This document shows, in pieces, positions 21,401 to 54,631 of a DNA stretch of 64,000 nucleotides. Position 1 is the first letter of the stretch. The number at the start of each line of letters is the position of its first letter. The stretch is from IMG/VR virus record IMGVR_UViG_3300005826_000294, positions 124,001 to 188,000 of that record. The stretch is one strand, 5' to 3'. The position numbers and the translations under genes were made by a program. The notes below the pieces were generated by a model. That model was not told the DNA's origin, ran no database searches, and saw nothing but the letters and a program-made list of their open reading frames with translations.

Positions 21401-23355
21401 ATCTTTACAACTTTATCTGAACCAACATTCTGAAAATTTATTCTTTTTGTCCCAACAGGAAAATCTCTCGACATTTCAATAATATTGAACCAGTTTTCTG
21501 GAGAAGCCGTAGAACCACCAGCCCCTATATATTCAACTCGTACTACCCCACGCAACTCCCCGTAATCTTGATCATAACCATCCATAAATAATTCATATAA
21601 TGTATGAATACCAGTATTCGTAGAAACACTAAAAGAATCAGAATAAATTTCAACAGATACATTTGTAGCGGTAGAAAATCCTGAATGACTACCAATGGTT
21701 ATCGAATTCGATGTTGAAGAGTTAAATACATATGTTCCAGCATCTGGATGATTCTTAATTCTAACAACTCCTGTTTGATCAACTCCAAAAGCAGTTAGAT
21801 CTTGATCAATATTTTTAATTAATTTAGAAGTATCTGTAACACCAGAAGCACTAACAATTTTTCGTATTCCATAAAAATTATATCCATCAATATAAAATCT
21901 TCTAGGACCAACACTATAATCAGATTCATTTCCTACGAAGCCTAATGCTTCCCAAGCACTTTCAGATGGCGTAGAAACATCACGAAACTCAACATATCCA
22001 TCTGGTTCATCAAAAGCAATTCCTATTTCTCCCTTATGTGTAAATGCTATGAGAGGATAGTTATAAGTATCACTTTTAAAAATTTTATTTAAAGCAATAG
22101 AAAGACCTTCTGGAGTCCAAATGCTGGGAGTTGAGTTTATAACAGGATATGTTTGAAGTGCTTGATATGCATCTATATCTATTGTTTCTCCTGTTGCCCA
22201 AGCAATTTTGATATATTTACTAGTACTTGTTATTTTTCTTGTGTCTAATCCATTACTAAGTAAATAAGGAGCACTTGGATGGATAAGTTGAAGTAAAGAT
22301 CCTCCAAGATTTCCAGGAATTGTATCATGACGTATTGCTAATTTTAGCATACTGGGTTCTGTAGTTTCTTCAATATTCCTATAAATAGTAGCTGTGGGAC
22401 TTACACCACTTATAGGAATAGCTCTAAAAAAATAAACTATTCCAGTAGAAGCATTTACATTATCGATATTTCTTGTATAAGTCTCTGTTCCAATAACAAT
22501 ATCTATTCTATCTCCTCTTAAAACTTGAGCTAAATCAGAAGGAACCGAGGTAAATGCTACATTTTTATCACCAGCAGATATATTATTAATGGCTGATGAT
22601 GAAATAATAGTTACCCCATGGTTAGTAGAACCATAAAATGTTTTTTGAGTATTTAAAATACCATTACTATGTTGTTCATCTTGATGTATGGTTAAAGTTG
22701 TAACTCCAAGAGCATCGAGTTTTTCAATAGCCGTTTGAACTTCATCAGCATTTATGAATGTATCTGTATCATCAAAAGAAATAGCACTCGCATTATGAGC
22801 ATCAATAGGGTCAGATATATGATCAACAATTCTTGTATCAAGGTCATTAATTATGCCTTGTAAATTATAATTAACATATGTTCCTAAATATCCATCTATA
22901 TCACTTGTGCGATGACGACTAAAAGTTGAAGGATGTGCTACATGTCTTGCGAGATTAGTAATATCTCCCTGAACTACTTTATTAAGAGCATCATGCTCTA
23001 CACGTAAGGCCCCAATTAATTCTCTTAATATTTTTGTAGAATAGTTTAAATCTAATTTTGATTCTGTAATACCAGCATTATTACCAACCATACTATCTGT
23101 AATTGGTAAAGTAACTAAACCAATAGTAGAAAGAGCAGATGCTTTAATAGTTCCATCAACATTTAAAGATTGATTAAGTCTTGAAGCAACATCTGTATTA
23201 GAACCATGTGGGTTTATTCCCAAAGTTTGCTCAATGTTAAAAACTGCACTACGTATACCATTAATGGCGTCTCCGCCTATCTCAACGATATTATCATCTA
23301 TTCTAATTAAAGTTACATCATCGTCAAGTTCATTAGGATATTTGCTATCAACCAT
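18475..23355 (-). CDS. Large virion fibre/spike with right-handed beta-helix (pectin-lyase-like) domain
   Basis: 1626 aa; Asn/Ile/Ser-rich beta-helix repeats in the C-terminal half; N-terminus homologous to 24469..28503. Confidence 0.65.
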   Translation of the reverse strand: MVDSKYPNELDDDVTLIRIDDNIVEIGGDAINGIRSAVFNIEQTLGINPHGSNTDVASRLNQSLNVDGTIKASALSTIGLVTLPITDSMVGNNAGITESKLDLNYSTKILRELIGALRVEHDALNKVVQGDITNLARHVAHPSTFSRHRTSDIDGYLGTYVNYNLQGIINDLDTRIVDHISDPIDAHNASAISFDDTDTFINADEVQTAIEKLDALGVTTLTIHQDEQHSNGILNTQKTFYGSTNHGVTIISSSAINNISAGDKNVAFTSVPSDLAQVLRGDRIDIVIGTETYTRNIDNVNASTGIVYFFRAIPISGVSPTATIYRNIEETTEPSMLKLAIRHDTIPGNLGGSLLQLIHPSAPYLLSNGLDTRKITSTSKYIKIAWATGETIDIDAYQALQTYPVINSTPSIWTPEGLSIALNKIFKSDTYNYPLIAFTHKGEIGIAFDEPDGYVEFRDVSTPSESAWEALGFVGNESDYSVGPRRFYIDGYNFYGIRKIVSASGVTDTSKLIKNIDQDLTAFGVDQTGVVRIKNHPDAGTYVFNSSTSNSITIGSHSGFSTATNVSVEIYSDSFSVSTNTGIHTLYELFMDGYDQDYGELRGVVRVEYIGAGGSTASPENWFNIIEMSRDFPVGTKRINFQNVGSDKVVKMGTPVTSPASSVDVTDPGTTYILPTSDVIGYRFRIYDYNNVDYVDIEIANDGFLTTTTDQAIDLTIYKRASEDKYVQVGQVLHDTNGFKHLSDRRLLGTVGRKDIRNDFSRDYISYPRSLLRGNGVIYGFEVSGSLIVEGGQVLVDGNIYSVSTTGLDIPKDGLISTYNIFVDGDGILQFMKDDQVGSGFTTPSVLEIINSSDKVILAQVDVNSSNTVTDIRDLRRFVNNIDNKIDLVADDEEINGSFSSLQSAFYYIYNSGTTSRRVRVRGTITHNLSNGPLYVPDGVTILGDVRSGSSIITRPNIFIIGSGTTLFAPISGTSITGLCIRDLKIEMDSSAGTSAIIGNSTTSIVDLTLENCLFENIRNSSGFSRIVYSTSLTNTIINNCIFNFDTSIGSVDAYVFYSTTSIDTIHINNSQSTLTSTNDNYFMYISAGTGIVDLYMNNCMINLGSPTSAGSAIKTNILQNSFIINSNISYTSVVSTNIGIEALTLTECQIKGCYFSNINTGILALTNTSNNIISDCGFNELYVSAIILNSDENSIIKNNLITSSDISLSATDGIIKLIDPNKTLVDKNIINITDSSSASGIGILISNTSQDCILSYNILKNSGSNIGLKQAIVFDGGGGTSGGDHIEDSMVGNKVRDFYGNSSDQGIYMENCDGTIVSQNSIINCCAPIKTFNCPNIVVSNNTFTSSDNYTLVSMSHNTTHINIKLVNNNIISTSLSLTNRVVDFQSSRSQVIGNFITTESNTKTHLYINSTLNTLINNNVFRGTVSYTTEAVLELGSVSYYCLITNNDFTATSSSGPMITDGGSKNVDYMNKGQTYNVVLPNGAAVIDSAISGSFSSWITYGGGWVVSSSTYDATYYNLNFYFSTEIVPAGATINNVEVYYNISAGVKGDFQLEWNLSRGFGSLQTTIPIRAASDAQGNGIQEEIVIPSGNNIMQYEDVHAIRLIPQNTVGTIYVLQVRVNYTL

Positions 23356-24027: not shown

Positions 24028-24459
24028 CTATTCAGCATTATGTAATGCTTCTAAAAGTGATGTATAAAATGAAACAGATTGAGTAAATTTTTCATATTTT
24101 TGTAAATATTTTTCTGCTTCTTTCTCATCGGATTGTAATAAAGAGTTATACATATTTAAAGCATTTTCTGCTAAAATATTAGCTTTTTCCTTATTCATAT
24201 AATAAATTGCTGTATTATTCGGAGTAACAAAATCATTATTCTCATATCCATCAATTATAGTGATTATATCATATCCATCAAATCTATATGATTGATCATT
24301 AATATGTTCATAAATAAATGGAGGAAACTCTCTACCATCTAAAAGTTTTACTGTTTGATTATTTTTAATTTCTTCATTATTTAATTCTGCTACTCCACTA
24401 TCAAATTCTTCTTCTGAAATTTTCGTATACATTTTTTTTATTTGAAACTCTATACTCAT
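24028..24459 (-). CDS. Hypothetical protein (two DGY motifs)
   Basis: 143 aa ORF in the operon. Confidence 0.55.
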   Translation of the reverse strand: MSIEFQIKKMYTKISEEEFDSGVAELNNEEIKNNQTVKLLDGREFPPFIYEHINDQSYRFDGYDIITIIDGYENNDFVTPNNTAIYYMNKEKANILAENALNMYNSLLQSDEKEAEKYLQKYEKFTQSVSFYTSLLEALHNAE

Positions 24460-24468
24460 TTTATCACC

Positions 24469-27400
24469 TTATGAAGCATAACCATTATCATCTCCCAGTC
24501 GTGGTAAAGCACCAAATCCTCCAGGATTTGCCCCGCCCTTCGCAATATTAGCATCAATAACATAATTTGTTGCGGATGTATAATCAATTCCCATTATAGA
24601 ACCACTATTAGAAACTCTATTTCCAACACATAATACTTCTACACTTGACTTCATACTAATAGATGAATCAGCTCCAACACCATAAATTCTGTTTCCAACA
24701 CAAATTCCACGCTCTCCATAATCTAAATTAATACCAATAGTGCTTGAATTTGTGGGACTATTGACGCTATTTCCAACACAAACCCAATCATCAACGTAAG
24801 TTAAATCAATTTGAGAGACACCATTTCCACCACATCTTGTTAAATAATTACCACAAATAGTAATTTCATTAGAATATATAACTATTCCTTGAAAAATAGA
24901 ATCTCGTATCCAATTACCAGAAATTAAACATCCTGCAGAATTTGTATCAATATATAAACCATTAAAAGAAGGAGAAAAAATCCAATTTGAAGATATTAAA
25001 GTACCTCCACTAGTTCCACTTAATATTATTCCACTATAAGATGGGTCATATATATAATTTCCAGTTATATTACAGAATACACTATTATATATTTCTATTC
25101 CAGTAGCTCCAACACTATAAATCATATTTCCTTGAATTAACAAGTTGCTTGCCCCTGAAGCACCTTTTATTCCATAGTTTAAAGATTGTAAAATTGAATT
25201 ACCAGAAATTGTACTGAAATCTCCACTACTAGTTAAATATATAGAAGAATTAGATGAACCTTGAATTATATTATTATTACAAATAACATAACTACCATCA
25301 ATTTCAATTCCATAATAATTAGCATTTTTAATAAAATTTCCTGAAACAATTGACCTACTTCCAATATCTTTTATTCCATGATAACCAGAAGTGCCTGTTT
25401 GATCTGTTATCATAAAATTATTCAAAATTATTGAGTCAGTACTTCCATTCATATGAATTGGAGATTTATTAACAAAAGAATATGTGCCTACAATCAAATT
25501 ATCAGCAATTGTATAAAAAGAACCTGCTCCTATATATATACCATAATCTAAATTAGAACGAGGAGTATCAATTACATTACCACTTATTAATGTTTTTTTA
25601 CTAGAAGTTGAAGTAGAAATTCCATATGAATTCGCTTCTCCTCCATATTGTATAATTACATTATTATTTACATTACAACTATCTCCAACTTCAAAAATAC
25701 CATGACTTGAATTTGATGTTCCTTGCATAATATTATTCGAACATAATACTTGAGAAGTTCCATTAAAATGAAAACCTATTTTTGGACAACCAAACAATAT
25801 ATTTCCAATAGCACTAATTCTTGACCATCCATTAGGAGTATAAAATGCCCCATTAGTACCACTATAAAGATTTGACATTATGTTTCCAGAAATCAAAACA
25901 TTATAATTAGAGAAACTAACAACCGAAAGTTCAATTCCATATCCACCAGCACCATAGTTAGCAATATAATTATTTGATATAATTGAAGAAGAACCGACTC
26001 CAGAAATTCCAGAAGAACCAGAGCCTATAACTGATTGTAACCAGTTATTAGTTATTATAGATCCAGCACAATCAGTAACTTTAATTCCCCAACCCTGACA
26101 ACTTATTAAACGATTATCTGAAATAGTAATTCTATCTCCTGTAGTAGATTGAATTCCAGCAGAATTATAACTATTAATAGTGTTTCCAACAACAATACTA
26201 TCATCACCTATATAATCTATTCCAACAGATGAGTTAGAGTTTCCAAGTAATACATTTCCAGATATTGTAATACCAGAATTATTATTAACTTGAATTCCTG
26301 TTCCAGCAACACCATTAATTGTATTATTTGCTATTACTCCAATTGAAGATGTTGCCATTTCTATTGCTGATGTAGTAGTTGTGATACTTGGATTACCATA
26401 AATTTGATTTCCAATAGCATGACTACAATTTTCGATCGCATAGATTCCAGGTGCTGTTATTTTGTTTCCAACAACCCAAGTTTCGGCTCCACGTCCTTTA
26501 ATAGCAATCATTGTTGATGGTGGAGTTCCAACACTATAATAATTATCAATGAAATTTCCATAAATTGAAATAAAAGCTCCACTTCCTGTTCCAGCTCTAC
26601 AATTTATTCCATAATTAGAAATACCCTTAATTGTATTATCTGAAATTACACATCCATTATCTTGTCCAGAAGCATTATTCCAAATAGCAATTCCATTTAA
26701 CATAACAGTTGTTGAAGATTGAAATCCAAGAATTAAATTACCATCAATTCTACATTGGGTTGGATAAGCAAGAAGTATCCCAGTATTAAATCCACCTTTA
26801 ATAATATTATCTCCAATTGTACAATATTGTGATGCTTTAATTCCAGAATATGAAGTAGCACTAAAAATATCTTGATAAATAATATTTCCAACAATTACAG
26901 AATTCTTTAAAACTTGAGCATATTTATTAGATGTTTGATATTCTATTCCTCCCAATTCTACTTCTACAATATTTTCAGAAAAAACAGAATTAGAAACAGT
27001 TGTTGAACCTCCTGAACTACCTAATCTCAAAAAATAAGGACAAGCAGTAGATCCAGCTTTTGTTAATTTACAATTAGTAATTGATAAATTAATAATATTT
27101 GTACTATTCCCAACAACAGCGAGACATAACTTTGTTCCTGATACTCCAAGATTTGATTCTAAAGTTATGTCTGTTAAAGTAATATTATCTGCTAATACAT
27201 CAAATAACTTATAATCTTGATTTGTTGTAATCTTTCTTCCGCATCCATCAATTTCTATTCCTTCTAAAGTTAATGCTATTTCCATTTCTGAACTAGAAGT
27301 GATAGATATATCACTAGATAATAGGATCTTCATTGGCGGAATTAATTCATTTCCATTATTTATTATTTTAACATATTCAATAGCAGATTTTAATGAAGTA

Positions 27401-28503
27401 AAATCACAACCATATCCATCTTTTCCAGAAATAGGTTTATTACCAACACTTATGTAATTCTTATCATTTACAAAAACTCCGTATCTTCTTATATCTATGC
27501 TTGTCGTCCAAGTAGCACCAGATCTTATTATTTTATGAAGAAGAACTACTGGATTTTCTGGTCGTGTTGGAATTGAAGTGGAAATATTAGCAGAAGCAAC
27601 TCCACTAGATACTTCCATATATACATAAGAAGTAGTACCATCTGGAACTACAACACTTCCACCGCTATATTTTAATATACGACCATTAGCGGAAACAAAA
27701 CCAGAAGAAACATTTGCTGTTCCACCTGATCCTGAAACTGCTAGTCCTTCAACCACAAAAGCATTAAAAGCTTTGTCTCTAAAACTAGCACCTTCATCCA
27801 AAAAGTTACCAGCTTCTATTAATTGACTTTGAACATCTGTACCAGAAAATGTATATCTAGTCCCAGTAGAAGTTGAAAAACCTGTCGTTCCAACTAGTCC
27901 AGAACCTGTTGAATTTCCAAAAGCATCAATAAGATTTAATAAAGATATTAATTGTGCTTTTAAAGTTCCAGAAGATACAGAAAAATTTGTTCCACTAATA
28001 GAAGCACCACTTATTTTTTGTGTTCCAGTGGTTCCACCACCAAGTTGTGATACTATTTCAGTTATTGCGTTCCTAATTAAAGATAATGAAATAGAGGCTC
28101 CGTCAGCAAATGTAGAAGATCCGCTTCCACCATACATTATAGCATCATTAAGAAACTCAAGAATACTGGATACCTGATCTGCTAAAGGACCTGCAACTAA
28201 ACTATAAGGAGGCGTATCTAATGATGTTGGAAGAACCCCAGTCCTTACAGGACTCATAATAACATCATCAAAGTGTCTAGGAGGGTTTCCAAGAACATGG
28301 GCTTCTATATTACTATATGCGTCATTTAATCGTGCGACCACAGTTCCAAATGGACCTTGGGGATTAACACCAAGTGTTCTCTCAATTGCTAGAATAGCAC
28401 TTCTTAAATCATTGTGGTCTCCAGCAACTATCTCTGAACGTTTATCAACAGCGACTCTGATCTCTGCGTAACCATCAACAGAGGTGGGGTATTTTGTAGC
28501 CAT
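24469..28503 (-). CDS. Large virion fibre/spike with extensive right-handed beta-helix repeats
   Basis: ORF track starts at 28512; the SD-preceded ATG at 28503 (MATKYP) is more likely. Many 'I.GN.I' beta-helix rungs. Confidence 0.65.
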   Translation of the reverse strand: MATKYPTSVDGYAEIRVAVDKRSEIVAGDHNDLRSAILAIERTLGVNPQGPFGTVVARLNDAYSNIEAHVLGNPPRHFDDVIMSPVRTGVLPTSLDTPPYSLVAGPLADQVSSILEFLNDAIMYGGSGSSTFADGASISLSLIRNAITEIVSQLGGGTTGTQKISGASISGTNFSVSSGTLKAQLISLLNLIDAFGNSTGSGLVGTTGFSTSTGTRYTFSGTDVQSQLIEAGNFLDEGASFRDKAFNAFVVEGLAVSGSGGTANVSSGFVSANGRILKYSGGSVVVPDGTTSYVYMEVSSGVASANISTSIPTRPENPVVLLHKIIRSGATWTTSIDIRRYGVFVNDKNYISVGNKPISGKDGYGCDFTSLKSAIEYVKIINNGNELIPPMKILLSSDISITSSSEMEIALTLEGIEIDGCGRKITTNQDYKLFDVLADNITLTDITLESNLGVSGTKLCLAVVGNSTNIINLSITNCKLTKAGSTACPYFLRLGSSGGSTTVSNSVFSENIVEVELGGIEYQTSNKYAQVLKNSVIVGNIIYQDIFSATSYSGIKASQYCTIGDNIIKGGFNTGILLAYPTQCRIDGNLILGFQSSTTVMLNGIAIWNNASGQDNGCVISDNTIKGISNYGINCRAGTGSGAFISIYGNFIDNYYSVGTPPSTMIAIKGRGAETWVVGNKITAPGIYAIENCSHAIGNQIYGNPSITTTTSAIEMATSSIGVIANNTINGVAGTGIQVNNNSGITISGNVLLGNSNSSVGIDYIGDDSIVVGNTINSYNSAGIQSTTGDRITISDNRLISCQGWGIKVTDCAGSIITNNWLQSVIGSGSSGISGVGSSSIISNNYIANYGAGGYGIELSVVSFSNYNVLISGNIMSNLYSGTNGAFYTPNGWSRISAIGNILFGCPKIGFHFNGTSQVLCSNNIMQGTSNSSHGIFEVGDSCNVNNNVIIQYGGEANSYGISTSTSSKKTLISGNVIDTPRSNLDYGIYIGAGSFYTIADNLIVGTYSFVNKSPIHMNGSTDSIILNNFMITDQTGTSGYHGIKDIGSRSIVSGNFIKNANYYGIEIDGSYVICNNNIIQGSSNSSIYLTSSGDFSTISGNSILQSLNYGIKGASGASNLLIQGNMIYSVGATGIEIYNSVFCNITGNYIYDPSYSGIILSGTSGGTLISSNWIFSPSFNGLYIDTNSAGCLISGNWIRDSIFQGIVIYSNEITICGNYLTRCGGNGVSQIDLTYVDDWVCVGNSVNSPTNSSTIGINLDYGERGICVGNRIYGVGADSSISMKSSVEVLCVGNRVSNSGSIMGIDYTSATNYVIDANIAKGGANPGGFGALPRLGDDNGYAS

Positions 28504-28504
28504 A

Positions 28505-29386
28505 CTAAACAAACTCTCCTAAATATTTATTTTTTGCTATATTATATTTTCTATCAAGCCTAGTTTTAAAAACTGAATCTTTATATAACCATTCTAAAAT
28601 TCTTTTGGTTTGTATTCTTCCTCCAAATGATATTTCACATATATTTTTATAAGCACATATTTTAGTTTTATTTGAAAAACAATATTTATTAAGGTTTTTA
28701 CTAACCCAACTTAACATTTCTTTTGTTCCCGCAAATCCTATTTTATATTCTGTTTTACAAATATAACCATCGCCATCTAAATATCCTCTTATAAAATTTC
28801 TTATATTACTTTCATTATATAATACTGGAGGTTTTAAGGTTAAAGATTTTTTTTCAGTTATATTGAAATTTTTATATAAATTAGAACAAATTTCTTCAGA
28901 CCCAAACACAACTCCAATTTGATTTTTATATGAATATAACTTATTATTAAAATTTATAGCATTAGCAAATTTATTTATAGCATCTATATCACATTTTTTT
29001 AAAGTAAAACTTAATTTTGTTTTTAATACACAACCATCAGACGCTATAAAACCGCCCCAATATGAATTTTCATTATTAATAAAATTAAAAAAATTATGAT
29101 TAATAAATGGATTTCTCATAATTTCAGACGCTGTTTTTCCAATTCCCAATTTTTTTATTCTATATGAAATAGAACTATAACTTATATCATATTTTTTAGA
29201 AATCTCTTTTACATTCATACCTTTTAAATATTCTTTTTTTATAATATTATCACTCAGATTTAAACGTCTAGTTAAAATTATTCCCTGATATTTTAATTCT
29301 TTTCTTATTTTATACTTACTAATTCCTAATAATTTATGTATTTCAGATATTGTTTTACCAGATTTATATAATTGTATTATATTCAT
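28505..29386 (-). CDS. LAGLIDADG homing endonuclease with N-terminal HTHs
   Basis: YWGGFIASDG and FIRGYLDGDG motifs. Confidence 0.85.
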   Translation of the reverse strand: MNIIQLYKSGKTISEIHKLLGISKYKIRKELKYQGIILTRRLNLSDNIIKKEYLKGMNVKEISKKYDISYSSISYRIKKLGIGKTASEIMRNPFINHNFFNFINNENSYWGGFIASDGCVLKTKLSFTLKKCDIDAINKFANAINFNNKLYSYKNQIGVVFGSEEICSNLYKNFNITEKKSLTLKPPVLYNESNIRNFIRGYLDGDGYICKTEYKIGFAGTKEMLSWVSKNLNKYCFSNKTKICAYKNICEISFGGRIQTKRILEWLYKDSVFKTRLDRKYNIAKNKYLGEFV

Positions 29387-31359
29387 AATGTATGAGTATG
29401 TCCTACAACATTTTGAACAATACCGTTTATTATTATATGATTATGATTTTCTGAAACCAATGTTGCTGTTTTATAACTTAAAATATTTACATTCTCAGGA
29501 ATAACAATCTGATGATTATGAGCAGGAATACCTGGAGCAGAAGATGTTGATGTAACTGCTGAACCAGGTCTCGGGCTTGCATCTCTTAAAATAGGAAATT
29601 GATAAATAATATCCGACACAGGGAAACGCTTCATTCTAAATTTTTGAGCCCCCGTTTGTGTAAAAAAAGCTCTCACCCTTGTTACATCCAAAATCTCATA
29701 TCTAAACTCTTCAGTATTATCTGGATTAAATCTTATTAAAATATCTCTATCTTTTATCGCCGGAAAAGCCATAGTCCAAGCCGAAGGTTCATATGCTGGC
29801 TCTAATCCTCCGCGATCTACAATGTTTGTATCATCTGTTGAAGGATCAACTCTTACAAGAATTCTACGATCTGATCTTCGTGGATTAAAAAATTGAACAT
29901 ATCCCTGCGTAAAACCTACTCCTAAACAAGTAGGACATTTAGCATTTTGATGTTCTCTCCTCTGCATCACACAATGGCACCTAATTCCTGTCCACATTCT
30001 TCTAGCAAGAACAAATGGTTCTCCTGTAGATTCTAATAAAAGTTCTTCTCGTTGAAACATATGAGTACTAACATCTGATTCTTTAACTAAATGTCTATTA
30101 CCATCAGCATCAAATCTAACCTGAGCTCCACCAAAATAACTTTTATTACATTGTCCTTTCATAAAACTACTAGGGGATTTTGCTCTATATGTTCCACAAT
30201 AATCAAGTCTTGGAAAATCTCCAGAAGCATCATTATTATCACCTGGAGTTGTAATATTATCAAATGGTTGTTGTCTTATTCTTAAATAACCATCATGAAA
30301 GGCATATCCATCATATCCATCTCTATACCCATCACTATATCCATCTAATAATACATTTGTTAAAGCATAATTCGGTTTTTGAAATGTAGGAACAGATTGA
30401 ACTTTTTTTGTATTTCCATCTTCTTTTCCACCATATAATCTTATTAATGATCCTAAACTATGATTTTCAGCATATGTTATATCAAAACCACGAGTTGCTA
30501 CAACAAAACCACTAGGAGAATATTGTTTTGAAGAATATCTTATAAGTTCGTCTCCAATAAGCAATATTCCAAAATCTGGAAAACCTGATGTTGATACTGC
30601 TGGAACAAAAAGTGCTTGATCATTAATATAACCATCTAATTGTGTTAATGGATAAGAATATAAATCTACCCCTACTTGATTTCTTCCAGTTATAGTTATA
30701 TGGCTAGGATTAAATTCTGCTACTCTTACTCCAAAGAAATATTGATCACCTGGTCTTAAACCCGCTATTGTTGCTTTATTATCGATAGACATAAAATCTG
30801 GATAACCGTCGAATACTAATTCTCTATCAGTAGAAACATAAATATTATAAAAAATTACATTATTTTCATTATTTGGATATGCTTCCAACCAATCAAGTTG
30901 AACCTCAGTCCCAATTCCTAAGTCTGTTGCTATTTCCAATCCCAAATTAGTTGGAGGAAAAAATGGCTTACTAGGATCACAAGCTCTAGATAATGATGTT
31001 GTAGAAATTTCTGGTGCAGAAGTAGAATACCCTGATGTAAAAAATGAATAATCTAATTCTATTAAATCATCAAGATTATCTTTAACTTCAAGATGTATAT
31101 TTATTTCAGAAGCTCTAGGAAAGAAACTAGGGGCTTTAGGATATATTCCAACAACATTTTTTCCTGTCCCAGACGCAATATTTCCAGAATATCCTCCAAC
31201 AAATGCTCCATTTGATATTACAGAAACACCTAATATGGTTACAGAAAGAGTGTTGATTTGTGCTGGATTAGCACCATCAAGAATAGTAAAACTAATTATG
31301 CTAGTCCTAGAAACACTCGTTTGATTAGAACTTGGAATTAATTGTGTAAATTCCGCCAT
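29383..31359 (-). CDS. Neck / head-closure protein (gp14-like) with added Ig/FN3-like N-terminal domains
   Basis: C-terminal 'RRMWTGIRCHC...CPTCLGVGFTQGY...WTMAFPAIKDRDILIRF...FRYEI..VTR' resembles head-closure proteins; FN3-like 'QLDWLEAYP...YNIY...YFFGVRV'. Confidence 0.6.
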   Translation of the reverse strand: MAEFTQLIPSSNQTSVSRTSIISFTILDGANPAQINTLSVTILGVSVISNGAFVGGYSGNIASGTGKNVVGIYPKAPSFFPRASEINIHLEVKDNLDDLIELDYSFFTSGYSTSAPEISTTSLSRACDPSKPFFPPTNLGLEIATDLGIGTEVQLDWLEAYPNNENNVIFYNIYVSTDRELVFDGYPDFMSIDNKATIAGLRPGDQYFFGVRVAEFNPSHITITGRNQVGVDLYSYPLTQLDGYINDQALFVPAVSTSGFPDFGILLIGDELIRYSSKQYSPSGFVVATRGFDITYAENHSLGSLIRLYGGKEDGNTKKVQSVPTFQKPNYALTNVLLDGYSDGYRDGYDGYAFHDGYLRIRQQPFDNITTPGDNNDASGDFPRLDYCGTYRAKSPSSFMKGQCNKSYFGGAQVRFDADGNRHLVKESDVSTHMFQREELLLESTGEPFVLARRMWTGIRCHCVMQRREHQNAKCPTCLGVGFTQGYVQFFNPRRSDRRILVRVDPSTDDTNIVDRGGLEPAYEPSAWTMAFPAIKDRDILIRFNPDNTEEFRYEILDVTRVRAFFTQTGAQKFRMKRFPVSDIIYQFPILRDASPRPGSAVTSTSSAPGIPAHNHQIVIPENVNILSYKTATLVSENHNHIIINGIVQNVVGHTHTL

Positions 31360-31418
31360 TTATATATACATCCTATTATTTGGTATATTACTCTAAAAAT
31401 ATGAAATTATTAATAGAA

Positions 31419-31907
31419 TCAAATGTCCTTAGTAAGTTCCTGAATATACTCTTTTCTTTTCTTACCTTTAACATCATGATGATCTAAAAGTTGTTCAAGA
31501 TATAATTGGATTTTCTCGGGAGATTCATGATCATCCATATATTCTATTTGAGCCTGAAAGGCTTCTTGTTCATTTTCATCATCCAAATATTTATCTTTAT
31601 CTACTTTTCCTTTTACCATTCCAGCTTCTTGTTGAAAACAATGGGTCAGTTCGTGTATTACGTATCTCATAATATCTTCCCATTTTTCAGATTTTAATAA
31701 ATTTTCGTTTAAAATTATAATACCATTAATAGTTTTTGCTGATACATCTAATGGTTCAAATTTAATTTCAACAGAATCAACAAAGTCTATATCTTTATTA
31801 TATTTTTTACATTTCTCTTTATATGGTTCTTCTTTCTTAACTTCCTTTTTAATTTTTTTTATTAATCCATCATATAGTTTAGAAAGACGAGTCAATGTAA
31901 TCACCAT
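31419..31907 (-). CDS. Zinc metallopeptidase-like protein (HExxH)
   Basis: 'YVIHELTHCFQQ' plus a downstream 'ENEQEAF' third-ligand-type motif. Confidence 0.7.
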   Translation of the reverse strand: MVITLTRLSKLYDGLIKKIKKEVKKEEPYKEKCKKYNKDIDFVDSVEIKFEPLDVSAKTINGIIILNENLLKSEKWEDIMRYVIHELTHCFQQEAGMVKGKVDKDKYLDDENEQEAFQAQIEYMDDHESPEKIQLYLEQLLDHHDVKGKKRKEYIQELTKDI

Positions 31908-32808
31908 ATCCTATTTTTATTAAAAAACTATCAAATCTATTATGTATTTTTCTATATTTATTTTCATTAAAATGGGATTCTAAGTCCTTAATAACAAACG
32001 CAAACCAATTTAATTTCTTAATTTTTCTGCGTTTATATTTATCTCTATAAAAAACTTTATTAAAAACATCTTTTCCAAATATTGGTTTAAAATGTCCAAT
32101 TCCATCCCAACAAATAGCAATCTTTAATTCGGGAATTGTAATATCAATTTCATATGGAGGTATTAAATCATAATCGTGATGAATAATTTCAGCATTTAAT
32201 CTTTTGTTTAATTGATTATAAAATGCTATTTCTCTTTTTGATCCCAATCTCCCCGCTTCTTCCATCGCCTTCATAGATTTTATAGATCTTCTTATTTCAA
32301 TTCTCTTTACTCTTTCATTATATTTTTCGCAAGAAAACTCTTTAAATATTTTTATTATTGATGAAGAGCATAATGAAAATTTTTCTGCTATTTCTTTAAC
32401 AAATAAATTAGTATTAAAATAAGATAAAATCTGCTTTTTGGTCTCTTTGCTTATTGAATTAGGACGATCTTTCATCCTGTTTGATCTATAAATTGAATTA
32501 TTATGAAGATATTTTTTATAAATATTTTTATCTAAACTAACATATTTTTGAATTGTTCTTTTCTTAATATTAAATTTTTTGCTTAATTCCGTTAAACATA
32601 ATCCATTATTTACAGCATCATATATATCATAAATGTTTTTATTATAAACAGAATTATTACTATTAATTACTCTATTCTTAACAACTTTTTCACCAAATAC
32701 TTTAATCCAATAAGATTTAATTGTTCTTGGATCTAAATTATATTCTTTCTGTAATAATGTTAAGGGTTTAGTGGAATATATCTCTAAAAGTAGTTTATTT
32801 ATATCCAT
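31879..32808 (-). CDS. Multi-HTH protein with C-terminal DUF559/Vsr-like endonuclease
   Basis: 'PYEIDITIPELKIAICWDGIGHFKPIFG'; likely start at 32808 (MDINK), ORF track 32841. Confidence 0.7.
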   Translation of the reverse strand: MDINKLLLEIYSTKPLTLLQKEYNLDPRTIKSYWIKVFGEKVVKNRVINSNNSVYNKNIYDIYDAVNNGLCLTELSKKFNIKKRTIQKYVSLDKNIYKKYLHNNSIYRSNRMKDRPNSISKETKKQILSYFNTNLFVKEIAEKFSLCSSSIIKIFKEFSCEKYNERVKRIEIRRSIKSMKAMEEAGRLGSKREIAFYNQLNKRLNAEIIHHDYDLIPPYEIDITIPELKIAICWDGIGHFKPIFGKDVFNKVFYRDKYKRRKIKKLNWFAFVIKDLESHFNENKYRKIHNRFDSFLIKIGYGDYIDSSF

Positions 32809-32977
32809 CCAACTCTTCTTTTTGTAATTCAGCAATAGCAAGTGCTTGGTTTAAATTTGCTATACTTTCTTTCGCCACTTCAATTGCGTGCTGTAATCCT
32901 GCTATTTCTACTTTTACTTGCTTTAATGTAGATGGTTCGTTTATTCCTAAATACGCAATATACTTTTTAACTAACAT
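32795..32977 (-). CDS. Small coiled-coil hypothetical protein
   Basis: 60 aa amphipathic helix between two nuclease genes. Confidence 0.4.
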   Translation of the reverse strand: MLVKKYIAYLGINEPSTLKQVKVEIAGLQHAIEVAKESIANLNQALAIAELQKEELDGYK

Positions 32978-34052
32978 TTTTAATCCTTAAAACATTAAAA
33001 TCCTTATGTAAATTTTCAATTATCTTACTAACTGTTTTATTTACAATATACTTATCAACTTTTGAACAATCATCATCTATAATAATAACTTTCCATCCAA
33101 TTTTACATAATCTTTCTATTTTATCATTATCCCTTTCTTTAACTCTTTTTAATTTATTTTCACCAAAGATAGATTTCCTATGAAATGGTCCATCCCAAAA
33201 AATCGCTATTTTTTTTGATGGAATTGTAATATCTATTTCATATGGTTCGCAAATATCTAAATCATGATGTTTTACATTAAAAGATTGTTTTAATAATTTG
33301 TAGCATAAATTCTCGGGCTCAGATCCAGAAATACCATTTTTTCCACATTTTATTAAAGATTTTCGAAGACCTTCCTTTCTAACCATTATTAGCCTTTCTT
33401 CTCTATCTTCTTTACTAAAATTCTGAGAATAAAATTTTCTTACAGTTGCTTTTGATATATTACATTTAGAAGCAATTTCTTTTAAAGATGTTGAGGTAAA
33501 AAACATAATTCTAAGAGACTTCTTAATTTTCTTATCTATAACAGATAAATTCTTTATCTTTACATCTCTGTTTCTTTTAGAAGTTTTATTTTTACCATAA
33601 AACTCTATCCAATATTTATATGTAGTTTTATTATTACAACCAACCAATTTTGAAACATCTTTAATTGTTAAATCAGAATTAAATAAAGTTTTGATTTTAT
33701 TAATCTTTTCTTGAGATAAAACCCTTTTCCCATAATCTTTTATAGTTTTTGGTTTCCATCCAGCAATTTTTATATTTGGATTTCTTCTTCCATCTTTATA
33801 TTGTTTTGAAGTATCATTACTTCTTATAGTATGTAAAAACTTTTTAAAATCTATATTTCTTTTTAATAATTTTCTAATATAAGCAGGAGAACAAAAAATA
33901 TTATCTTGCTTTGATAATTGTATAACACCTTTATTAGTATTCAATATTAATTTATCTTGTTTTAGTCTAAATTCTTTATGTAATATATCTTTTTTATTCA
34001 TAATATGTCTAGATATATTTGAACTAATAATATTACAAACTGGACACTTCAT
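32967..34052 (-). CDS. Zn-finger plus multi-HTH protein with DUF559/Vsr-like endonuclease
   Basis: N-terminal CPVC...H...H; 'PYEIDITIPSKKIAIFWDGPFHRKSIFG'. Confidence 0.7.
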   Translation of the reverse strand: MKCPVCNIISSNISRHIMNKKDILHKEFRLKQDKLILNTNKGVIQLSKQDNIFCSPAYIRKLLKRNIDFKKFLHTIRSNDTSKQYKDGRRNPNIKIAGWKPKTIKDYGKRVLSQEKINKIKTLFNSDLTIKDVSKLVGCNNKTTYKYWIEFYGKNKTSKRNRDVKIKNLSVIDKKIKKSLRIMFFTSTSLKEIASKCNISKATVRKFYSQNFSKEDREERLIMVRKEGLRKSLIKCGKNGISGSEPENLCYKLLKQSFNVKHHDLDICEPYEIDITIPSKKIAIFWDGPFHRKSIFGENKLKRVKERDNDKIERLCKIGWKVIIIDDDCSKVDKYIVNKTVSKIIENLHKDFNVLRIKNVS

Positions 34053-35401
34053 AGTTCTTTAAGAATATCATTTTCAACCATCATTGCTTTATTTATAATT
34101 GTTTGTTCCGATAGTAATATTGGATTATAAATATTATTTTTATCTCCGCTTTCCCATCTATAAATAATTTTATGTTTTTTTGATATTTTATTTAAACGAT
34201 GTATTGTATGTAATAATAAATCTCCATATTTTTCTTTGGAAACACGATTTATATCGTTTGGAGCATATATAGAAGGATTTCCATGCCAAAAATCCCCTAA
34301 ATATTCATATACTATCCCTTCATATAAAGCATCAACAATATATTTACCTACTCTAATTTCACGATTTTTATTAGGTATTTTCAACTCATTAAGCCATTCA
34401 ATACAAGATATGGATACAGATTTATTATTACACATTGAACAACCAGTTCCATTAACTCGATTTTTAATATTAGCTTCCCATGAATGTCCTTTTTTACACT
34501 TCCACCAAACTTTCTTATGAGATTGAGGCAAATAAAGAGAAGGATCTAAATTTTTATCATAATCCCATTCTTTACATAAATCTGGATAATTAAATAATAA
34601 GTTATATTTACTATGAACAACTTTATTTTCACATATTAAACACTTATTTGTTCTTTTTACAAAAACACGAATTTTTAATTTATAACTATGACCTTTATCA
34701 CACTTCCACCAAACTTTCTTTACAGAACTAGGCAAATAATTTTTAGGAGAATCGTTCTTATCATAATCCCAATGTTTACAAATATCTGGAAAAAGAACAG
34801 ATAAATTATTCTCTTCCGTTGCTTTTTGCCCATCACAATAAGGACATCCATGTCCCGCTATCCGTGTCGCTGTTCGTGCTTTCCAAGTATGATTGTTTTT
34901 ACAAATCCACCATAAATTTTTGTTAGTAAAAGGTCTATGTTTGCTTGGATCAAAGTTATTCTTTTCTTGGTTAAGTTCCTTACACAACTCTGGATATTTA
35001 TATAATAAACTATCCTCTAATAATGTTTTTTTACTATTACAATAAGGACATCCATGGCCATTGGTTCGTGTATTTGGAGAAGCATCCCAGCTGTGTCCTT
35101 TATTACACTTCCACCATGTTTTTTTACATGACCCAGATGTGTATTGATTAGGATCTAATTTATTTTTATCATAATCCCATTCTTCACATAAAATAGGATG
35201 TTTAACTAATAAGTTATTTTCTTTTGATGGTTTTTTGCCAGAACAATAGGGACAACCACTATGTTTAGATTTCCTATTATTTATAGAAGCCTCCCATGAA
35301 TGATTGTTTTTACAAATCCACCACACTCTTTCTGCGGATTTATAGCCTTCTATAGAACCGTTTTTATCAAAATCCCATTCAGTATATAAATCTTTTATCA
35401 T
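34049..35401 (-). CDS. Repeated treble-clef zinc-ribbon (DUF4379-like) protein with PD-(D/E)XK-like nuclease
   Basis: About five repeats of 'EWDY.KN...S.KK.WW.C.KGHSW.A....R..G.GCPYC'; C-terminus 'YIVDAL...VYEYLGDFWHGNP'. Confidence 0.75.
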   Translation of the reverse strand: MIKDLYTEWDFDKNGSIEGYKSAERVWWICKNNHSWEASINNRKSKHSGCPYCSGKKPSKENNLLVKHPILCEEWDYDKNKLDPNQYTSGSCKKTWWKCNKGHSWDASPNTRTNGHGCPYCNSKKTLLEDSLLYKYPELCKELNQEKNNFDPSKHRPFTNKNLWWICKNNHTWKARTATRIAGHGCPYCDGQKATEENNLSVLFPDICKHWDYDKNDSPKNYLPSSVKKVWWKCDKGHSYKLKIRVFVKRTNKCLICENKVVHSKYNLLFNYPDLCKEWDYDKNLDPSLYLPQSHKKVWWKCKKGHSWEANIKNRVNGTGCSMCNNKSVSISCIEWLNELKIPNKNREIRVGKYIVDALYEGIVYEYLGDFWHGNPSIYAPNDINRVSKEKYGDLLLHTIHRLNKISKKHKIIYRWESGDKNNIYNPILLSEQTIINKAMMVENDILKEL

Positions 35402-36519
35402 TTTAATATTATAAACCTTTTTGATGGATTTTGATAAAAATAGTTAATAATATCTATAAATCTATATTCATCTTCGTCTTTTATATTACCATTATCTTCT
35501 ATTACTATATGACACCAATTCTTTTTATATAAATTTCTTTTTCTAATTATATCATTTATAATGGTTTTTCTATATGCCTCTTCACCAAATATTGGAGATC
35601 TATGACATTTCCCATCCCAACAAATTGCGATTTTCTTTGATGGAATACTTATATCTATTTCTAATGGAAATACAACTTCATAATCATGATGTATAACATT
35701 TCTTCTTCCAAATCTATTAGTTAATTTTCTATAAAATTTTCTTTCAGGCTTGGAACCAATAAATCTACAAAGTTTATAGGAAGATGCTGTTTTTCTTTGC
35801 TGAATTTGCTTCATTCTTATTTTTCTTTTTTTTAAATCTTCTTCTTTGAATATTTCGTTCCAAACTCTTTTAATACTTCCAGAAGATGTTTTACATATTT
35901 TACATATTTTTCTAATAGAAAGATCTGACTTAAAATATTTAATAATTTTCTTATAACTATATGGATCTCTATTTTCTATTTTTTGTAAAGAAGAACTCTT
36001 TTTCTGTCGTTGTTTTGAAATTCTTTTTCCTCTATAATGAATATCTTCACTATTAAAGTTATATTTCATTATCCTTGATACTGTATTATATCCACATCCA
36101 ACCTTTTTAGAGATTTCTGTAATTGTTAAATCAGTATAAAAAAGATCTCTAACTTTATTTATGATATTTTCATTAACAATGAAATATCTATTGCCAGTGT
36201 TTGTTAAGTTTTTATTAGGTTTTCTTTTTTTTAATTCATATTGCCGTTTTAAAGATAAAGAATTCATTAATGATTTTCTTTCTTTATATCCTTCAATCAT
36301 ACTCCATTGCTTACATATATAACCAAAACTTATTCTAAATCCATATTTAACACTTAATTTTTTTGATAAATCAACACATGAAATGTTTTTATTAAAATAA
36401 CTAATTATATCTTTATTAATAATATCAACAAAGTATTTATGATCTTTAACCTTAAAAATATGATTGCTTATTCCTTTAATTTGATATAACTTATTACAAA
36501 CTGGACACTTCATCGTCAT
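35398..36519 (-). CDS. Zn-finger plus multi-HTH protein with DUF559/Vsr-like endonuclease
   Basis: MKCPVC start; 'PLEIDISIPSKKIAICWDGKCHRSPIFG'. Confidence 0.7.
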   Translation of the reverse strand: MTMKCPVCNKLYQIKGISNHIFKVKDHKYFVDIINKDIISYFNKNISCVDLSKKLSVKYGFRISFGYICKQWSMIEGYKERKSLMNSLSLKRQYELKKRKPNKNLTNTGNRYFIVNENIINKVRDLFYTDLTITEISKKVGCGYNTVSRIMKYNFNSEDIHYRGKRISKQRQKKSSSLQKIENRDPYSYKKIIKYFKSDLSIRKICKICKTSSGSIKRVWNEIFKEEDLKKRKIRMKQIQQRKTASSYKLCRFIGSKPERKFYRKLTNRFGRRNVIHHDYEVVFPLEIDISIPSKKIAICWDGKCHRSPIFGEEAYRKTIINDIIRKRNLYKKNWCHIVIEDNGNIKDEDEYRFIDIINYFYQNPSKRFIILK

Positions 36520-46684: not shown

Positions 46685-47268
46685 TATATTCTCCTTACAG
46701 AAACTTTACTATCTTTAATTGATATTTCTTTACCATTTTTTGTTGTTGATGCTTGAAATTTTATACAATGATAACCAGATTCCCATTCTATATTTAAAAA
46801 ACTACACTGGGTAATCCAACTCTCACTGTCTAATGATTCAAGAACATATAAGTCTTCATTATCTATATTAACTCTTAAAGAAATTAATCCTTTTTTATTT
46901 TTTCTTTTAACATTTGTGGTCCAATCTATACGATAATTACCAGAACAAAAAGGACTATTTGGGTTTATAGATATAATTGTCATTGGCTCTGTAGAAGATG
47001 TATTTATCTCTTGTTCTTGTGTTCCTTCTAATTCATTTATTAAAGTATTATTTTCTATTCCAAAATCTACAATATCTTTTTCTTCCTGATTCATTTCAAT
47101 TATATTATATCCATCATATCCATCATACCCATCAATTTTCCAATATTTTGAAGGAATGTCTTCTACATTAGATAAATCAGGATTAATTATCCAATCTTCT
47201 GTTGAATAGTCAGGAGTATTAACTGATAATAAGTATTCTTTTGTAGTCTTATTTAAAACATTCGCCAT
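46684..47268 (-). CDS. Putative virion protein with DGYDGYDGY
   Basis: 194 aa; 'SVNTPDY...WIINPDLS.V..IP.KYWKI' N-terminal module. Confidence 0.5.
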   Translation of the reverse strand: MANVLNKTTKEYLLSVNTPDYSTEDWIINPDLSNVEDIPSKYWKIDGYDGYDGYNIIEMNQEEKDIVDFGIENNTLINELEGTQEQEINTSSTEPMTIISINPNSPFCSGNYRIDWTTNVKRKNKKGLISLRVNIDNEDLYVLESLDSESWITQCSFLNIEWESGYHCIKFQASTTKNGKEISIKDSKVSVRRI

Positions 47269-54389: not shown

Positions 54390-54631
54390 TACTCCTCATT
54401 CATGGGTTCTTCTAACACTACAACATTCTCTGCCTGAGGGCCAGTGTTATTTGTCCCAAGAGTAAAAGAAACCTTTTGTCCAGCGGTTAAGGTCTTAAAA
54501 GCACCAGGCTCCGCTACAATATTAGTATAATGGACAAATAAATCCTTTCCTCCATCTTCAGGCTTACAAAACCCAAAACCTAAATTGTTATTAAACCATA
54601 TCACTTCACCCTTCATTACTTGATCTGTCAT
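54389..54631 (-). CDS. csp: Cold-shock domain RNA chaperone
   Basis: 'GEVIWFN...GFGF...DLFVHYTNI...FKTL..GQKVSF...GPQAENV' with RNP1 and RNP2. Confidence 0.92.
   Translation of the reverse strand: MTDQVMKGEVIWFNNNLGFGFCKPEDGGKDLFVHYTNIVAEPGAFKTLTAGQKVSFTLGTNNTGPQAENVVVLEEPMNEE

What the first reader, a model, noticed from the sequence alone, without database searches (positions are those of the whole stretch)
30286..30345. Five DGY in 20 residues in a linker of the neck protein (DGYSDGYRDGYDGYAFHDGY)
Seen: a dense cluster between the FN3-like region and the head-closure domain, with mixed Gly codons (GGA, GGG, GGT), so it is not a simple microsatellite. Inference: a multivalent acceptor or docking patch at the neck.
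Basis: partly seen in the sequence, partly recalled or inferred. Interest (0 to 1): 0.65.

Follow-up and report, generated by a model that had tools for sequence, protein, structure and literature searches.

The report
Conserved Asp-Gly-Tyr loop in phage neck protein
The five Asp-Gly-Tyr triplets are real and form one of the most conserved parts of a neck (head-closure) protein of an uncultured giant estuary phage; they are the densest case of a triplet that this whole phage group over-uses in its particle proteins, and its function is still untested.

Summary
Window 30286-30345 (minus strand) encodes DGYSDGYRDGYDGYAFHDGY, residues 339-358 of a 658-aa protein (29383-31359, minus). None of 20,000 shuffles gave more than 2 DGY in a 20-residue window.

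The domain reading holds. Residues about 425-591 fold like phage neck stopper (head-closure) proteins. They carry the four-cysteine zinc loop of phage 812 gp97 and match Bacillus phage G gp175 by profile (E 7e-12). An Ig-like domain and an FN3-like domain lie upstream.

The segment is not a loose linker. The core DGYGxDGYRDGYDGY is 92-99% conserved in 84 homologues, despite synonymous codon changes. Only its far half gains and loses about 14 residues, repeatedly. AlphaFold cannot place it in a monomer. It is missing from phage G gp175, and more distant relatives have one DGY there.

New here: DGY is 6.5-fold enriched across this proteome, only in the coding frame. It is enriched in related genomes too, but not in phages G or 812.

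Best guess (confidence 0.4): an exposed acidic, tyrosine-rich loop that becomes ordered on assembly and docks the outer arm onto another virion surface. Ligand or calcium binding and tyrosine modification remain open.

The parts
29383..31359 (-). Gene for the 658-aa neck stopper (head-closure) protein with outer decoration domains (P0001)
   Evidence: ORF and translation. 113 homologues from metagenomes. Fold and profile matches to neck stoppers.
31030..31359 (-). Residues 1-110: N-terminal Ig-like (CopC-like) beta-sandwich
   Evidence: pLDDT about 90. VIA Z 10.1 to CopC 6nfq and to other Ig-like domains over residues 1-110.
30349..30978 (-). Residues 128-337: FN3-like domain with a beta-domain inserted at about 220-311
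   Evidence: Pfam fn3 E 0.0053, below the cut-off. PDB profile hit to the ephrin receptor FN3, E 0.0066. VIA Z 9-10.5 to many FN3 domains, with alignments ending at residues 324-334.
30286..30345 (-). Residues 339-358: the DGY cluster (five DGY), a loop between strands 333-337 and 357-361
   Evidence: Sequence. Conservation 92-99% in the core. pLDDT under 50 for residues 338-355, and about 50-53 in the half-protein model. Length classes of 27 and 41 residues, 2-8 copies.
30076..30285 (-). Residues 359-428: arm between the DGY loop and the stopper barrel, with conserved Cys388 and Cys404
   Evidence: Mixed pLDDT of 48-82, two short helices and a hairpin. Cysteine conservation. This arm is absent from phage G gp175.
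29587..30075 (-). Residues 429-591: stopper (head-closure) helix plus beta-barrel core
   Evidence: VIA Z 10.2 to 8q01_S (phage 812 neck), 10.0 to 9jlf_C, 9.4 to 8hdr_A; the top 24 rows are all phage neck stoppers. Foldseek hits 8qkh_A, 8q01_S and 8qgr, the 812 stopper. BFVD best hit is phage G gp175, E 1e-10. hhalign to gp175: probability 97.5, E 7e-12.
29926..29979 (-). Residues 461-478: four-cysteine loop CxC-x11-CxxC, a predicted zinc site
   Evidence: C461, C475 and C478 are invariant and C463 is over 90% conserved. The loop aligns with the CPC...CxxC loop of 812 gp97, hhalign E 1.1e-4; that loop binds zinc in the crystal structure (PMC12886913). Inteins in 14 homologues split P477|C478.
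29386..29574 (-). Residues 596-658: C-terminal beta-rich domain with three HxH motifs
   Evidence: H614/616, H639/641 and H654/656 are at least 90% conserved. pLDDT about 88-93. No fold match was obtained for this part.

Best explanation
The gene encodes the neck stopper (head-closure) protein of an uncultured jumbo myophage, enlarged by an N-terminal Ig-like domain, an FN3-like domain and a C-terminal His-rich domain. The DGY cluster follows the last FN3 strand and leads into the arm that precedes the stopper barrel. It is a conserved loop that is probably surface-exposed, built from Asp-Gly turns each followed by a tyrosine. Its net charge is about -4, with five tyrosines per chain. If the ring is a hexamer like other stoppers, that gives about 30 tyrosines per neck. 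Inferred mechanism: the loop is floppy in the free subunit. In the assembled neck it becomes ordered by sticking to a complementary, probably basic or aromatic, surface of another virion component: a neighbouring subunit, the adaptor or capsid floor, or a neck-attached fibre. In this way it fixes the outer FN3 arm to the ring. Shown: protein identity, position of the loop, conservation, indel pattern and lineage distribution. Inferred: exposure, ordering on assembly, and the docking role.
For: Identity rests on fold and profile matches to neck stoppers and on the shared four-cysteine loop.

Conservation: core columns are 92-99% conserved against a protein mean of 66%. The 20-residue window ranks 14th of 639, behind only the windows over residues about 430-463 at the start of the stopper domain. 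Synonymous codon differences between homologues point to selection on the protein.

AlphaFold2 with 66 sequences gives pLDDT under 50 for residues 338-355, while the flanking strands 333-337 and 357-361 are modelled. High conservation with low monomer confidence is typical of interface segments.

The far half switches between 27- and 41-residue forms at least 6 times on the family tree, as exposed loops do, while the core stays fixed.

The cluster is an add-on. Phage G gp175 joins FN3 directly to the stopper helix. The roughly 530-aa clade keeps a single DGY at this site.

Chemistry: the only DGYDGY string in the paper library is an engineered mussel-inspired anionic peptide that coacervates with a Lys/Tyr-rich cationic partner (PMC12648293). 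This is an analogy only.
Against: No partner is identified. The self-association job gave no answer. No Lys/Arg- and Tyr-rich counterpart patch stands out in the proteome. The same triplet is enriched in many other particle proteins of the clade. That fits a general property (turn motif, ligand binding or a modification site) better than one specific neck contact. I had no model coordinates, so exposure and strand pairing are inferred from secondary structure and indel pattern only.
Confidence: 0.4

Rival explanations
1. Outward-facing ligand-binding patch. The DGY loops on the neck arm, and on fibre-like and Ig-like particle proteins, would bind host-surface or environmental glycans weakly and multivalently. 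Tyrosine would stack on sugars and aspartate would hydrogen-bond to them.
For: DGY is enriched 6.5-fold across the proteome, at protein level only, in 36 of 297 genes, mostly large particle-type proteins. Tandem DGYDGY sits between predicted strands of repeated domains in other proteins. In the roughly 530-aa clade a conserved DGYDGY lies in a different loop of the same protein, so the motif looks portable. It sits next to Ig-like and FN3 domains, which are usually external decorations.
Against: No carbohydrate-binding family was detected. There is no structure and no ligand. A neck position is far from the host-contact end of the tail.
Confidence: 0.17
2. Intrinsic structural element only: a stack of Asp-Gly beta-turns with a tyrosine ladder. 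It would act as a rigid spacer between the FN3 domain and the stopper, with no binding role.
For: Outside the neck protein, the residue before DGY is hydrophobic in 58% of 93 cases against a 35% background, as expected for strand-turn-strand. The spacing of the core is fixed. The 41-residue form looks like a hairpin, with a DGYDGY on each side of a GGPGA-type turn.
Against: AlphaFold2 does not fold it despite a 66-sequence alignment. A self-contained mini-fold is usually modelled confidently.
Confidence: 0.15
3. Cation (calcium or magnesium) binding loop. The five or six aspartates and glycine carbonyls would hold ions that stiffen the neck arm.
For: A dense run of Asp-Gly, near-invariant aspartates, and net negative charge.
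Against: No match to any known calcium-binding repeat family (RTX, thrombospondin type 3, EF-hand, dockerin) at E up to 1. No PDB sequence analogue other than chance hits. The invariant tyrosines are not explained.
Confidence: 0.1
4. Modification acceptor. The tyrosines (or aspartates) of DGY units would be modified by a phage- or host-encoded enzyme, for example O-glycosylation of tyrosine.
For: The genome encodes an NDP-sugar pathway (nucleotidyltransferase, 4,6-dehydratase, DegT aminotransferase), a GT47-like and several GT2 transferases, and a methyltransferase at 83.9-93.4 kb. Relatives also carry GT2 genes. The motif is shared by many particle proteins, as a sequon would be.
Against: Nothing links these enzymes to proteins; they could equally act on DNA or host glycans. 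No protein kinase or tyrosinase was found, and the sulfotransferase signal is only faint; the tyrosinase search matched none of the 14 control genomes either, so it says nothing. The relative with a weaker DGY enrichment and the relative whose neighbourhood shows none also have GT2 genes. The precise spacing of the core is more than a sequon needs.
Confidence: 0.08
5. Passive flexible linker of biased composition, produced by replication slippage.
For: Low pLDDT. Three identical GATGGATAT units, weak 9- and 12-base periodicity and length variation.
Against: Core conservation of 92-99% across homologues 46-78% identical, with synonymous changes. Linkers drift; this segment does not.
Confidence: 0.04

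Closest known systems
Staphylococcus phage 812 stopper protein gp97 (PDB 8qgr, 8q01, 8qkh; PMC12886913)
   Same: Beta-barrel stopper core (VIA Z 10.2, 143 residues aligned; Foldseek E 2e-5). The four-cysteine loop has the same CxC-x11-CxxC spacing (hhalign E 1.1e-4). Both carry an extra outer beta-sandwich domain.
   Different: gp97 is 292 aa and has no DGY cluster, no N-terminal Ig-like or FN3 arm and no C-terminal HxH domain. Sequence identity is about 13-18%.
Bacillus phage G gp175 (uncharacterised; cultured jumbo phage, similar G+C)
   Same: FN3-like domain fused N-terminally to a stopper core with a four-cysteine loop (hhalign probability 97.5, E 7e-12; BFVD Foldseek E 1e-10). The gene lies three genes upstream of the tail sheath gene, and that sheath is also the window sheath's best database match.
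   Different: 283 aa. FN3 runs straight into the stopper helix. It has no DGY cluster (one DDGY in an FN3 loop), no arm, no Ig-like domain and no HxH tail. The phage G tail module shows no DGY enrichment (1.4x).
T4 gp14 and other neck or head-completion proteins (9mkb, 9lu4; phiKZ neck 9xps_B; SPP1 gp16-type stoppers)
   Same: Same core fold class (Z 7.8-8.1, Foldseek probability 0.96-1.0).
   Different: No sequence similarity detected and no DGY segment. Their decorations differ.
Engineered mussel-foot-protein-5-inspired anionic peptide GG23 (PMC12648293)
   Same: Nearly the same make-up and local strings (GY-D-GY-S-D-GY...DGYDGY). Tyr, Gly and Asp act as stickers and spacers that bind a cationic Lys/Tyr peptide.
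   Different: It is synthetic, not homologous, and its tyrosines are converted to Dopa. It is a chemical analogy only.
Long Tyr/Asp/Gly-rich antibody loop (PG9 heavy-chain CDR3, e.g. 3u2s)
   Same: It is the only PDB sequence resembling the segment. From my own knowledge, it forms a protruding acidic tyrosine-rich beta-hairpin used for binding.
   Different: E 0.23, a chance match of composition and not homology.

Membership tests
Phage neck stopper / head-closure protein (SPP1 gp16-type, 812 gp97-type) | Beta-barrel core fold preceded by a helix | tested here: met
   The top 24 VIA rows are all neck stoppers, Z 10.2-6.5; tube, Hcp and Dit folds score 5.8 or less. Foldseek gives the same picture. 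BFVD hits are annotated neck or head-closure proteins.
Phage neck stopper / head-closure protein (SPP1 gp16-type, 812 gp97-type) | Four-cysteine zinc loop of the 812 gp97 type (CxC...CxxC) at the same place in the fold | tested here: met
   hhalign E 1.1e-4 to gp97 over the loop. The cysteines are invariant or over 90% conserved. Metal binding itself is not testable here.
Phage neck stopper / head-closure protein (SPP1 gp16-type, 812 gp97-type) | Forms a hexameric ring between adaptor and tail terminator | tested here: inconclusive
   The three-copy job on residues 326-600 returned 'no answer', score 0.00, with the partner poorly folded and no alignment used.
Phage neck stopper / head-closure protein (SPP1 gp16-type, 812 gp97-type) | Gene lies in the head-tail joining and tail module | tested here: inconclusive
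   It lies about 14 kb upstream of the tail sheath gene on the same strand, with beta-helix proteins and homing endonucleases between them. The order stopper then beta-helix protein is kept in L002 and L003. In phage G the homologue is three genes before the sheath. Adaptor and terminator genes were not identified.
Fibronectin type III domain | Pfam fn3 profile over the gathering score, or the fold | tested here: inconclusive
   The Pfam score is 17.4 bits against a cut-off of 25. The fold matches many FN3 domains at Z 9-10.5. So it is FN3-like by fold but not by the curated sequence threshold.
Known calcium-binding repeats (RTX, thrombospondin type 3, EF-hand, dockerin) | Match to the family profile or its consensus spacing | tested here: not met
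   The Pfam scan at E up to 1 lists only fn3. PDB sequence searches of the segment give only chance hits.
Collagen-like Gly-X-Y repeat | Gly at every third position over a long run | tested here: not met
   In the family consensus DGYGxDGYRDGYDGY, glycines fall at positions 2, 4, 7, 11 and 14, so the period is irregular.
Microsatellite / slippage-generated coding repeat | Near-identical DNA units, with copy number varying between close relatives | tested here: not met
   Only 2-3 weak copies of period 9 or 12. Codons are mixed, and other codons are used in L002. The four core units are fixed across 84 homologues; only the far half varies.
Intrinsically disordered inter-domain linker | Low predicted order together with low sequence constraint | tested here: not met
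   Low pLDDT is met, but sequence constraint is very high.

The most novel reading that the evidence does not exclude
DGY (and tandem DGYDGY) is a portable functional unit shared by the particle proteins of a whole clade of uncultured jumbo phages. It could be a sequon for a phage-encoded modification, such as tyrosine O-glycosylation by the phage's own sugar and glycosyltransferase genes. It could instead be a common 'sticker' through which different particle proteins, or particle and host surface, adhere. On either reading the neck cluster is the densest, multivalent site.
Probability: 0.12. Interest if true: 0.85.

Novelty: new variant of a known kind. Interest (0 to 1): 0.5.

Why it matters
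Neck stopper proteins are usually small, about 100-290 aa, and are studied for genome gating. Here a 650-aa version carries three extra domains and a highly conserved Asp-Gly-Tyr loop with no solved or described counterpart.

The same triplet is over-used 4-23 fold in the neighbourhoods of most related phages examined, and not in the composition-matched phages G or 812. That points to a lineage-wide rule of particle construction, adhesion or modification that nobody has described.

If the loop proves to be a docking or modification site, it would give a handle on how giant phages attach accessory structures to the neck. It would also provide a simple sequence marker for particle proteins in this uncultured group.

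The four-cysteine zinc loop, reported as confined to Herelleviridae, is also shown here to be wider spread. In this family it is a recurrent intein insertion site.

Tried and rejected
- tblastn of the protein against 50,697 GenBank phage records: no match.
- First IMG/VR scan with the single protein: nothing. The scan with the alignment then found 53 loci.
- Pfam and PHROGs on the protein give only weak fn3 and 'virion structural protein' hits.
- PHROGs and Pfam on about 35 neighbouring ORFs did not identify adaptor, terminator, portal or capsid genes.
- PDB sequence searches with the profile and with the DGY segment alone gave only chance matches: an antibody CDR3 at E 0.23, a CIRBP low-complexity region at E 2.8 and a fungal effector at E 3.
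- Complex prediction with three copies of residues 326-600 gave no answer. This is evidence neither for nor against binding.
- Searches of the genome for a protein kinase and a tyrosinase found nothing, and a sulfotransferase signal was only faint (20 positions, E 0.006). The tyrosinase search matched no control genome either, so it says nothing.
- A scan for a basic, tyrosine-rich counterpart patch found only Lys-rich stretches in non-structural-looking ORFs.
- GT2 genes are present in DGY-rich relatives, in the relative with weaker enrichment and in the one with none, so their presence does not discriminate.
- The genome search could not reach the records behind L002 and L003.
- A DNA-level cause of the DGY excess was rejected: 101 in-frame occurrences against 3 in other frames, 2 intergenic and 0 antisense.
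- The large representative protein search was not run, because the word search and family scans settled the family.
Full report
**1. Observation**

The finding lies on the minus strand. Window 29383-31359 (minus) is a 658-aa ORF, P0001. The reverse complement of 30286-30345 encodes DGYSDGYRDGYDGYAFHDGY, residues 339-358.

The protein holds 7 DGY, where its composition predicts 0.16. In 20,000 shuffles no 20-residue window held more than 2. Tandem Repeats Finder reports only weak 9- and 12-base periods of 2-3 copies.

A 197-base contig from an estuary RNA-seq library covers 30273-30469 without a single difference. The sequence is therefore reproducible. An RNA library does not by itself prove transcription.

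**2. Where it comes from**

The window is bases 124001-188000 of a 301,683-base IMG/VR virus record, estimated 75% complete. The record has 29.9% G+C, and 289 of its 297 ORFs lie on one strand.

It encodes a tail sheath whose best, and distant, database match is the sheath of Bacillus phage G. It also encodes three giant beta-helix proteins and many homing endonucleases. It is an uncultured jumbo myophage. P0001 has no match in 50,697 GenBank phage records.

**3. What the protein is**

P0001 has 113 homologues in metagenomes, some on contigs of up to 460 kb, and 53 loci in IMG/VR.

AlphaFold2 with a 66-sequence alignment gives a mean pLDDT of 82. The C-terminal half alone gives pTM 0.80.

- **Stopper core.** Residues about 425-591 match phage neck stopper (head-closure) proteins. 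VIA gives Z 10.2 to the phage 812 neck chain 8q01_S, and the top 24 rows are all neck stoppers. Tube, Hcp and Dit folds score 5.8 or less. Foldseek finds 8qkh, 8q01 and 8qgr, the last titled 'Stopper protein of phage 812'. In BFVD the best hit is phage G gp175, followed by proteins annotated neck or head closure.
- **Profile evidence.** By profile comparison gp175 is a true homologue: probability 97.5, E 7e-12.
- **Four-cysteine loop.** The loop C461-x-C463-x11-C475-x-x-C478 aligns with the zinc-binding CPC...CxxC loop of 812 gp97, E 1.1e-4 (PMC12886913).
- **Upstream domains.** An Ig-like domain covers residues 1-110. An FN3-like domain covers 128-337, with a beta-domain inserted at about 220-311.
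- **Downstream domain.** A 63-residue domain carries three near-invariant HxH motifs.

**4. Anatomy of the DGY segment**

The segment lies between the predicted strands 333-337 and 357-361. The first is the end of the FN3-like fold; FN3 alignments stop at residues 324-334. The second is the first strand of the arm that leads to the stopper helix at residue 430. Topologically it is an inter-domain connector.

It does not behave like a linker. In 84 full-length homologues that are 46-78% identical overall, the core DGYGxDGYRDGYDGY and the last DGY are 92-99% conserved per column. The protein mean is 66%. The window ranks 14th of 639 and is beaten only by the windows over residues about 430-463 at the start of the stopper domain. 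The window protein differs from the consensus only by lacking one Gly after the first DGY. Codons differ between homologues while the residues stay the same.

Between the fourth and last DGY the length varies. There is a 27-residue class (37 of 84) and a 41-residue class (15 of 84), with 2-8 DGY and a mode of 5. On a tree built without these columns the long form changes state at least 6 times. The far half is therefore evolutionarily labile, as exposed loops are.

AlphaFold gives pLDDT under 50 for residues 338-355.

**5. Origin**

Phage G gp175 runs from FN3 directly into the stopper helix and has no cluster. The roughly 530-aa clade, at 33-37% identity, keeps one DGY at this site. That DGY corresponds to the last one of the window protein. 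The same clade has a conserved His-x-x-DGYDGY in a different loop, near residue 300 of P0001. Another clade has about three DGY at the site. The most distant clade has none, or only a GY. The cluster is therefore a lineage-specific expansion around an older single DGY.

**6. An unexpected wider pattern**

- **Enrichment in this genome.** DGY is the second most enriched tripeptide of the whole proteome: 101 observed against 15.6 expected, or 6.5-fold.
- **It is a protein-level signal.** The coding 9-mer occurs 101 times in frame, 3 times in other frames, twice between genes and never antisense.
- **Where it sits.** It is concentrated in 36 of 297 genes, mostly large particle-type proteins. Tandem DGYDGY(DGY) occurs in window 46684-47268. 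It also occurs three times, in repeated domains, in a 1125-aa protein at 28541-31918 of the record.
- **Relatives.** The window as a whole shows a 9.8-fold excess. The 20-kb neighbourhoods of most IMG/VR relatives show 4-23 fold. In the most distant clade, whose neck proteins have 0-2 DGY, four neighbourhoods show only 0.8-1.9 fold and the others 3.7-5 fold.
- **Whole records.** Coding-strand counts agree: 101-130 against 12-44 for the reversed-pattern control, and 40 against 21-27 in a record of the distant clade.
- **Controls.** Composition-matched controls show no excess: 1.4-fold in the phage G tail module and 0.4-fold in phage 812.
- **Local context.** Outside the neck protein the residue before DGY is hydrophobic in 58% of cases against a 35% background, which fits strand-turn-strand.

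**7. Mechanism**

*Shown:* the identity of the protein; the position, conservation, indel pattern and lineage distribution of the cluster; and the absence of any known calcium-repeat, collagen or microsatellite signature.

*Inferred:* the loop is exposed, is unstructured in the free subunit, and becomes ordered in the assembled neck by sticking to another surface. That would fix the outer arm to the ring.

The chemistry is plausible. The only literature string containing DGYDGY is an engineered mussel-inspired anionic Tyr/Gly/Asp peptide that coacervates with a Lys/Tyr-rich partner (PMC12648293). The only PDB look-alike is a chance match, at E 0.23, to a long antibody CDR3 loop rich in Tyr, Asp and Gly.

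I give this docking reading a confidence of 0.4.

The clade-wide spread of the motif keeps other readings alive:
- **Outward ligand binding (0.17).**
- **A purely structural stack of turns (0.15).**
- **Cation binding (0.10).**
- **A modification acceptor (0.08).** The genome carries an NDP-sugar pathway and several glycosyltransferases. Relatives with strong, weak and no DGY enrichment all carry GT2 genes, and nothing ties these enzymes to proteins.
- **A passive slippage linker (0.04).** This is largely refuted by the conservation.

**8. Comparison and novelty**

The protein is a member of the stopper (head-closure) family by fold, by profile and by the zinc loop. It is a new, much enlarged variant. 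The DGY loop itself has no described counterpart. I rate it 'new variant of a known kind', with interest 0.5.

**9. Limits**

- I had no model coordinates, so strand pairing and exposure are inferred.
- The complex job gave no answer.
- Adaptor, terminator, portal and capsid genes were not identified.
- No alternative genetic code was used.
- The large representative protein search was not needed.

Noticed in passing
window 29926-29934 (minus; codons P477-C478), compared with homologues P0008, P0010, P0022, P0025, P0029, P0036, P0039, P0043, P0046, P0057, P0081, P0088 and P0109: Fourteen homologues carry an intein of about 430 aa with a LAGLIDADG endonuclease. It is inserted inside the CxxC of the stopper's four-cysteine loop, so the fourth cysteine is the +1 residue of the C-extein. 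The window's own gene has no intein.
   Followed up: yes
window 29926-29979 (minus); L005:12197-13075; L008:7575-8426: The four-cysteine zinc loop, which PMC12886913 describes as conserved only in Herelleviridae stoppers, is also present at the same place in this uncultured jumbo-phage family and in Bacillus phage G gp175 (there as CxxC...CxxC).
   Followed up: yes
window 29386-29574 (minus), residues 596-658: The C-terminal beta-rich domain has three near-invariant HxH motifs (six histidines per chain) and is confidently modelled. It is present in the roughly 530-aa clade too, but absent from P0110-P0113 and from phage G gp175. It may be a metal site of the kind seen in phage fibre tips; this is untested.
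   Followed up: partly
whole record G000; in the window: 46684-47268, 39282-41444, 52729-53376, 24028-24459 and 18475-23355 (all minus): DGY is enriched 6.5-fold across the proteome, at protein level only. Tandem DGYDGYDGY occurs in a 194-aa protein, and there are 8 DGY in a 720-aa protein. The bias is shared by most related jumbo-phage records but not by phages G or 812.
   Followed up: yes
loci L018-L060 (homologues of about 530 aa), aligned to P0001 residues about 300-303: In this clade a conserved His-x-x-DGYDGY sits in a different loop of the same protein, and the cluster site keeps only one DGY. The motif seems to have been placed independently in different loops.
   Followed up: partly
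window 28505-29386, 31879-36519, 11547-13046, 54606-55721 and 61180-61923 (all minus): The window has an unusually dense set of homing-endonuclease-like ORFs (LAGLIDADG, HNH, and helix-turn-helix plus nuclease). One lies directly after the neck gene with a 4-base overlap, and four lie in a row just upstream. The relative L002 lacks these at the same places.
   Followed up: partly
window 24469-28512, 18475-23355 and 47909-51985 (all minus): There are three giant right-handed beta-helix proteins of 1347, 1626 and 1358 aa. The first follows the neck gene in the window, in L002 and (as a 1315-aa protein without a Pfam hit) in L003, so it could be a neck-attached appendage. This is untested.
   Followed up: partly
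G000:C1:83891-93358 (L006:8891-18358), plus GT2 genes near 62.5 and 76.4 kb; outside the window: There is a cluster for making and transferring a modified sugar: nucleotidyltransferase, NDP-sugar 4,6-dehydratase, DegT aminotransferase, a GT47-like and GT2 transferases, and a methyltransferase. The target (particle proteins, DNA or host glycans) is unknown.
   Followed up: partly
window 29516-31103: Six short contigs from two estuary metatranscriptome libraries match the neck gene at 99-100% identity. This suggests an estuarine habitat and possibly transcription, but DNA carry-over cannot be excluded.
   Followed up: partly
whole record G000: 289 of 297 ORFs lie on one strand, and IMG/VR labels the 301.7-kb record a provirus within a 312.6-kb contig. 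I did not examine the contig ends.
   Followed up: no
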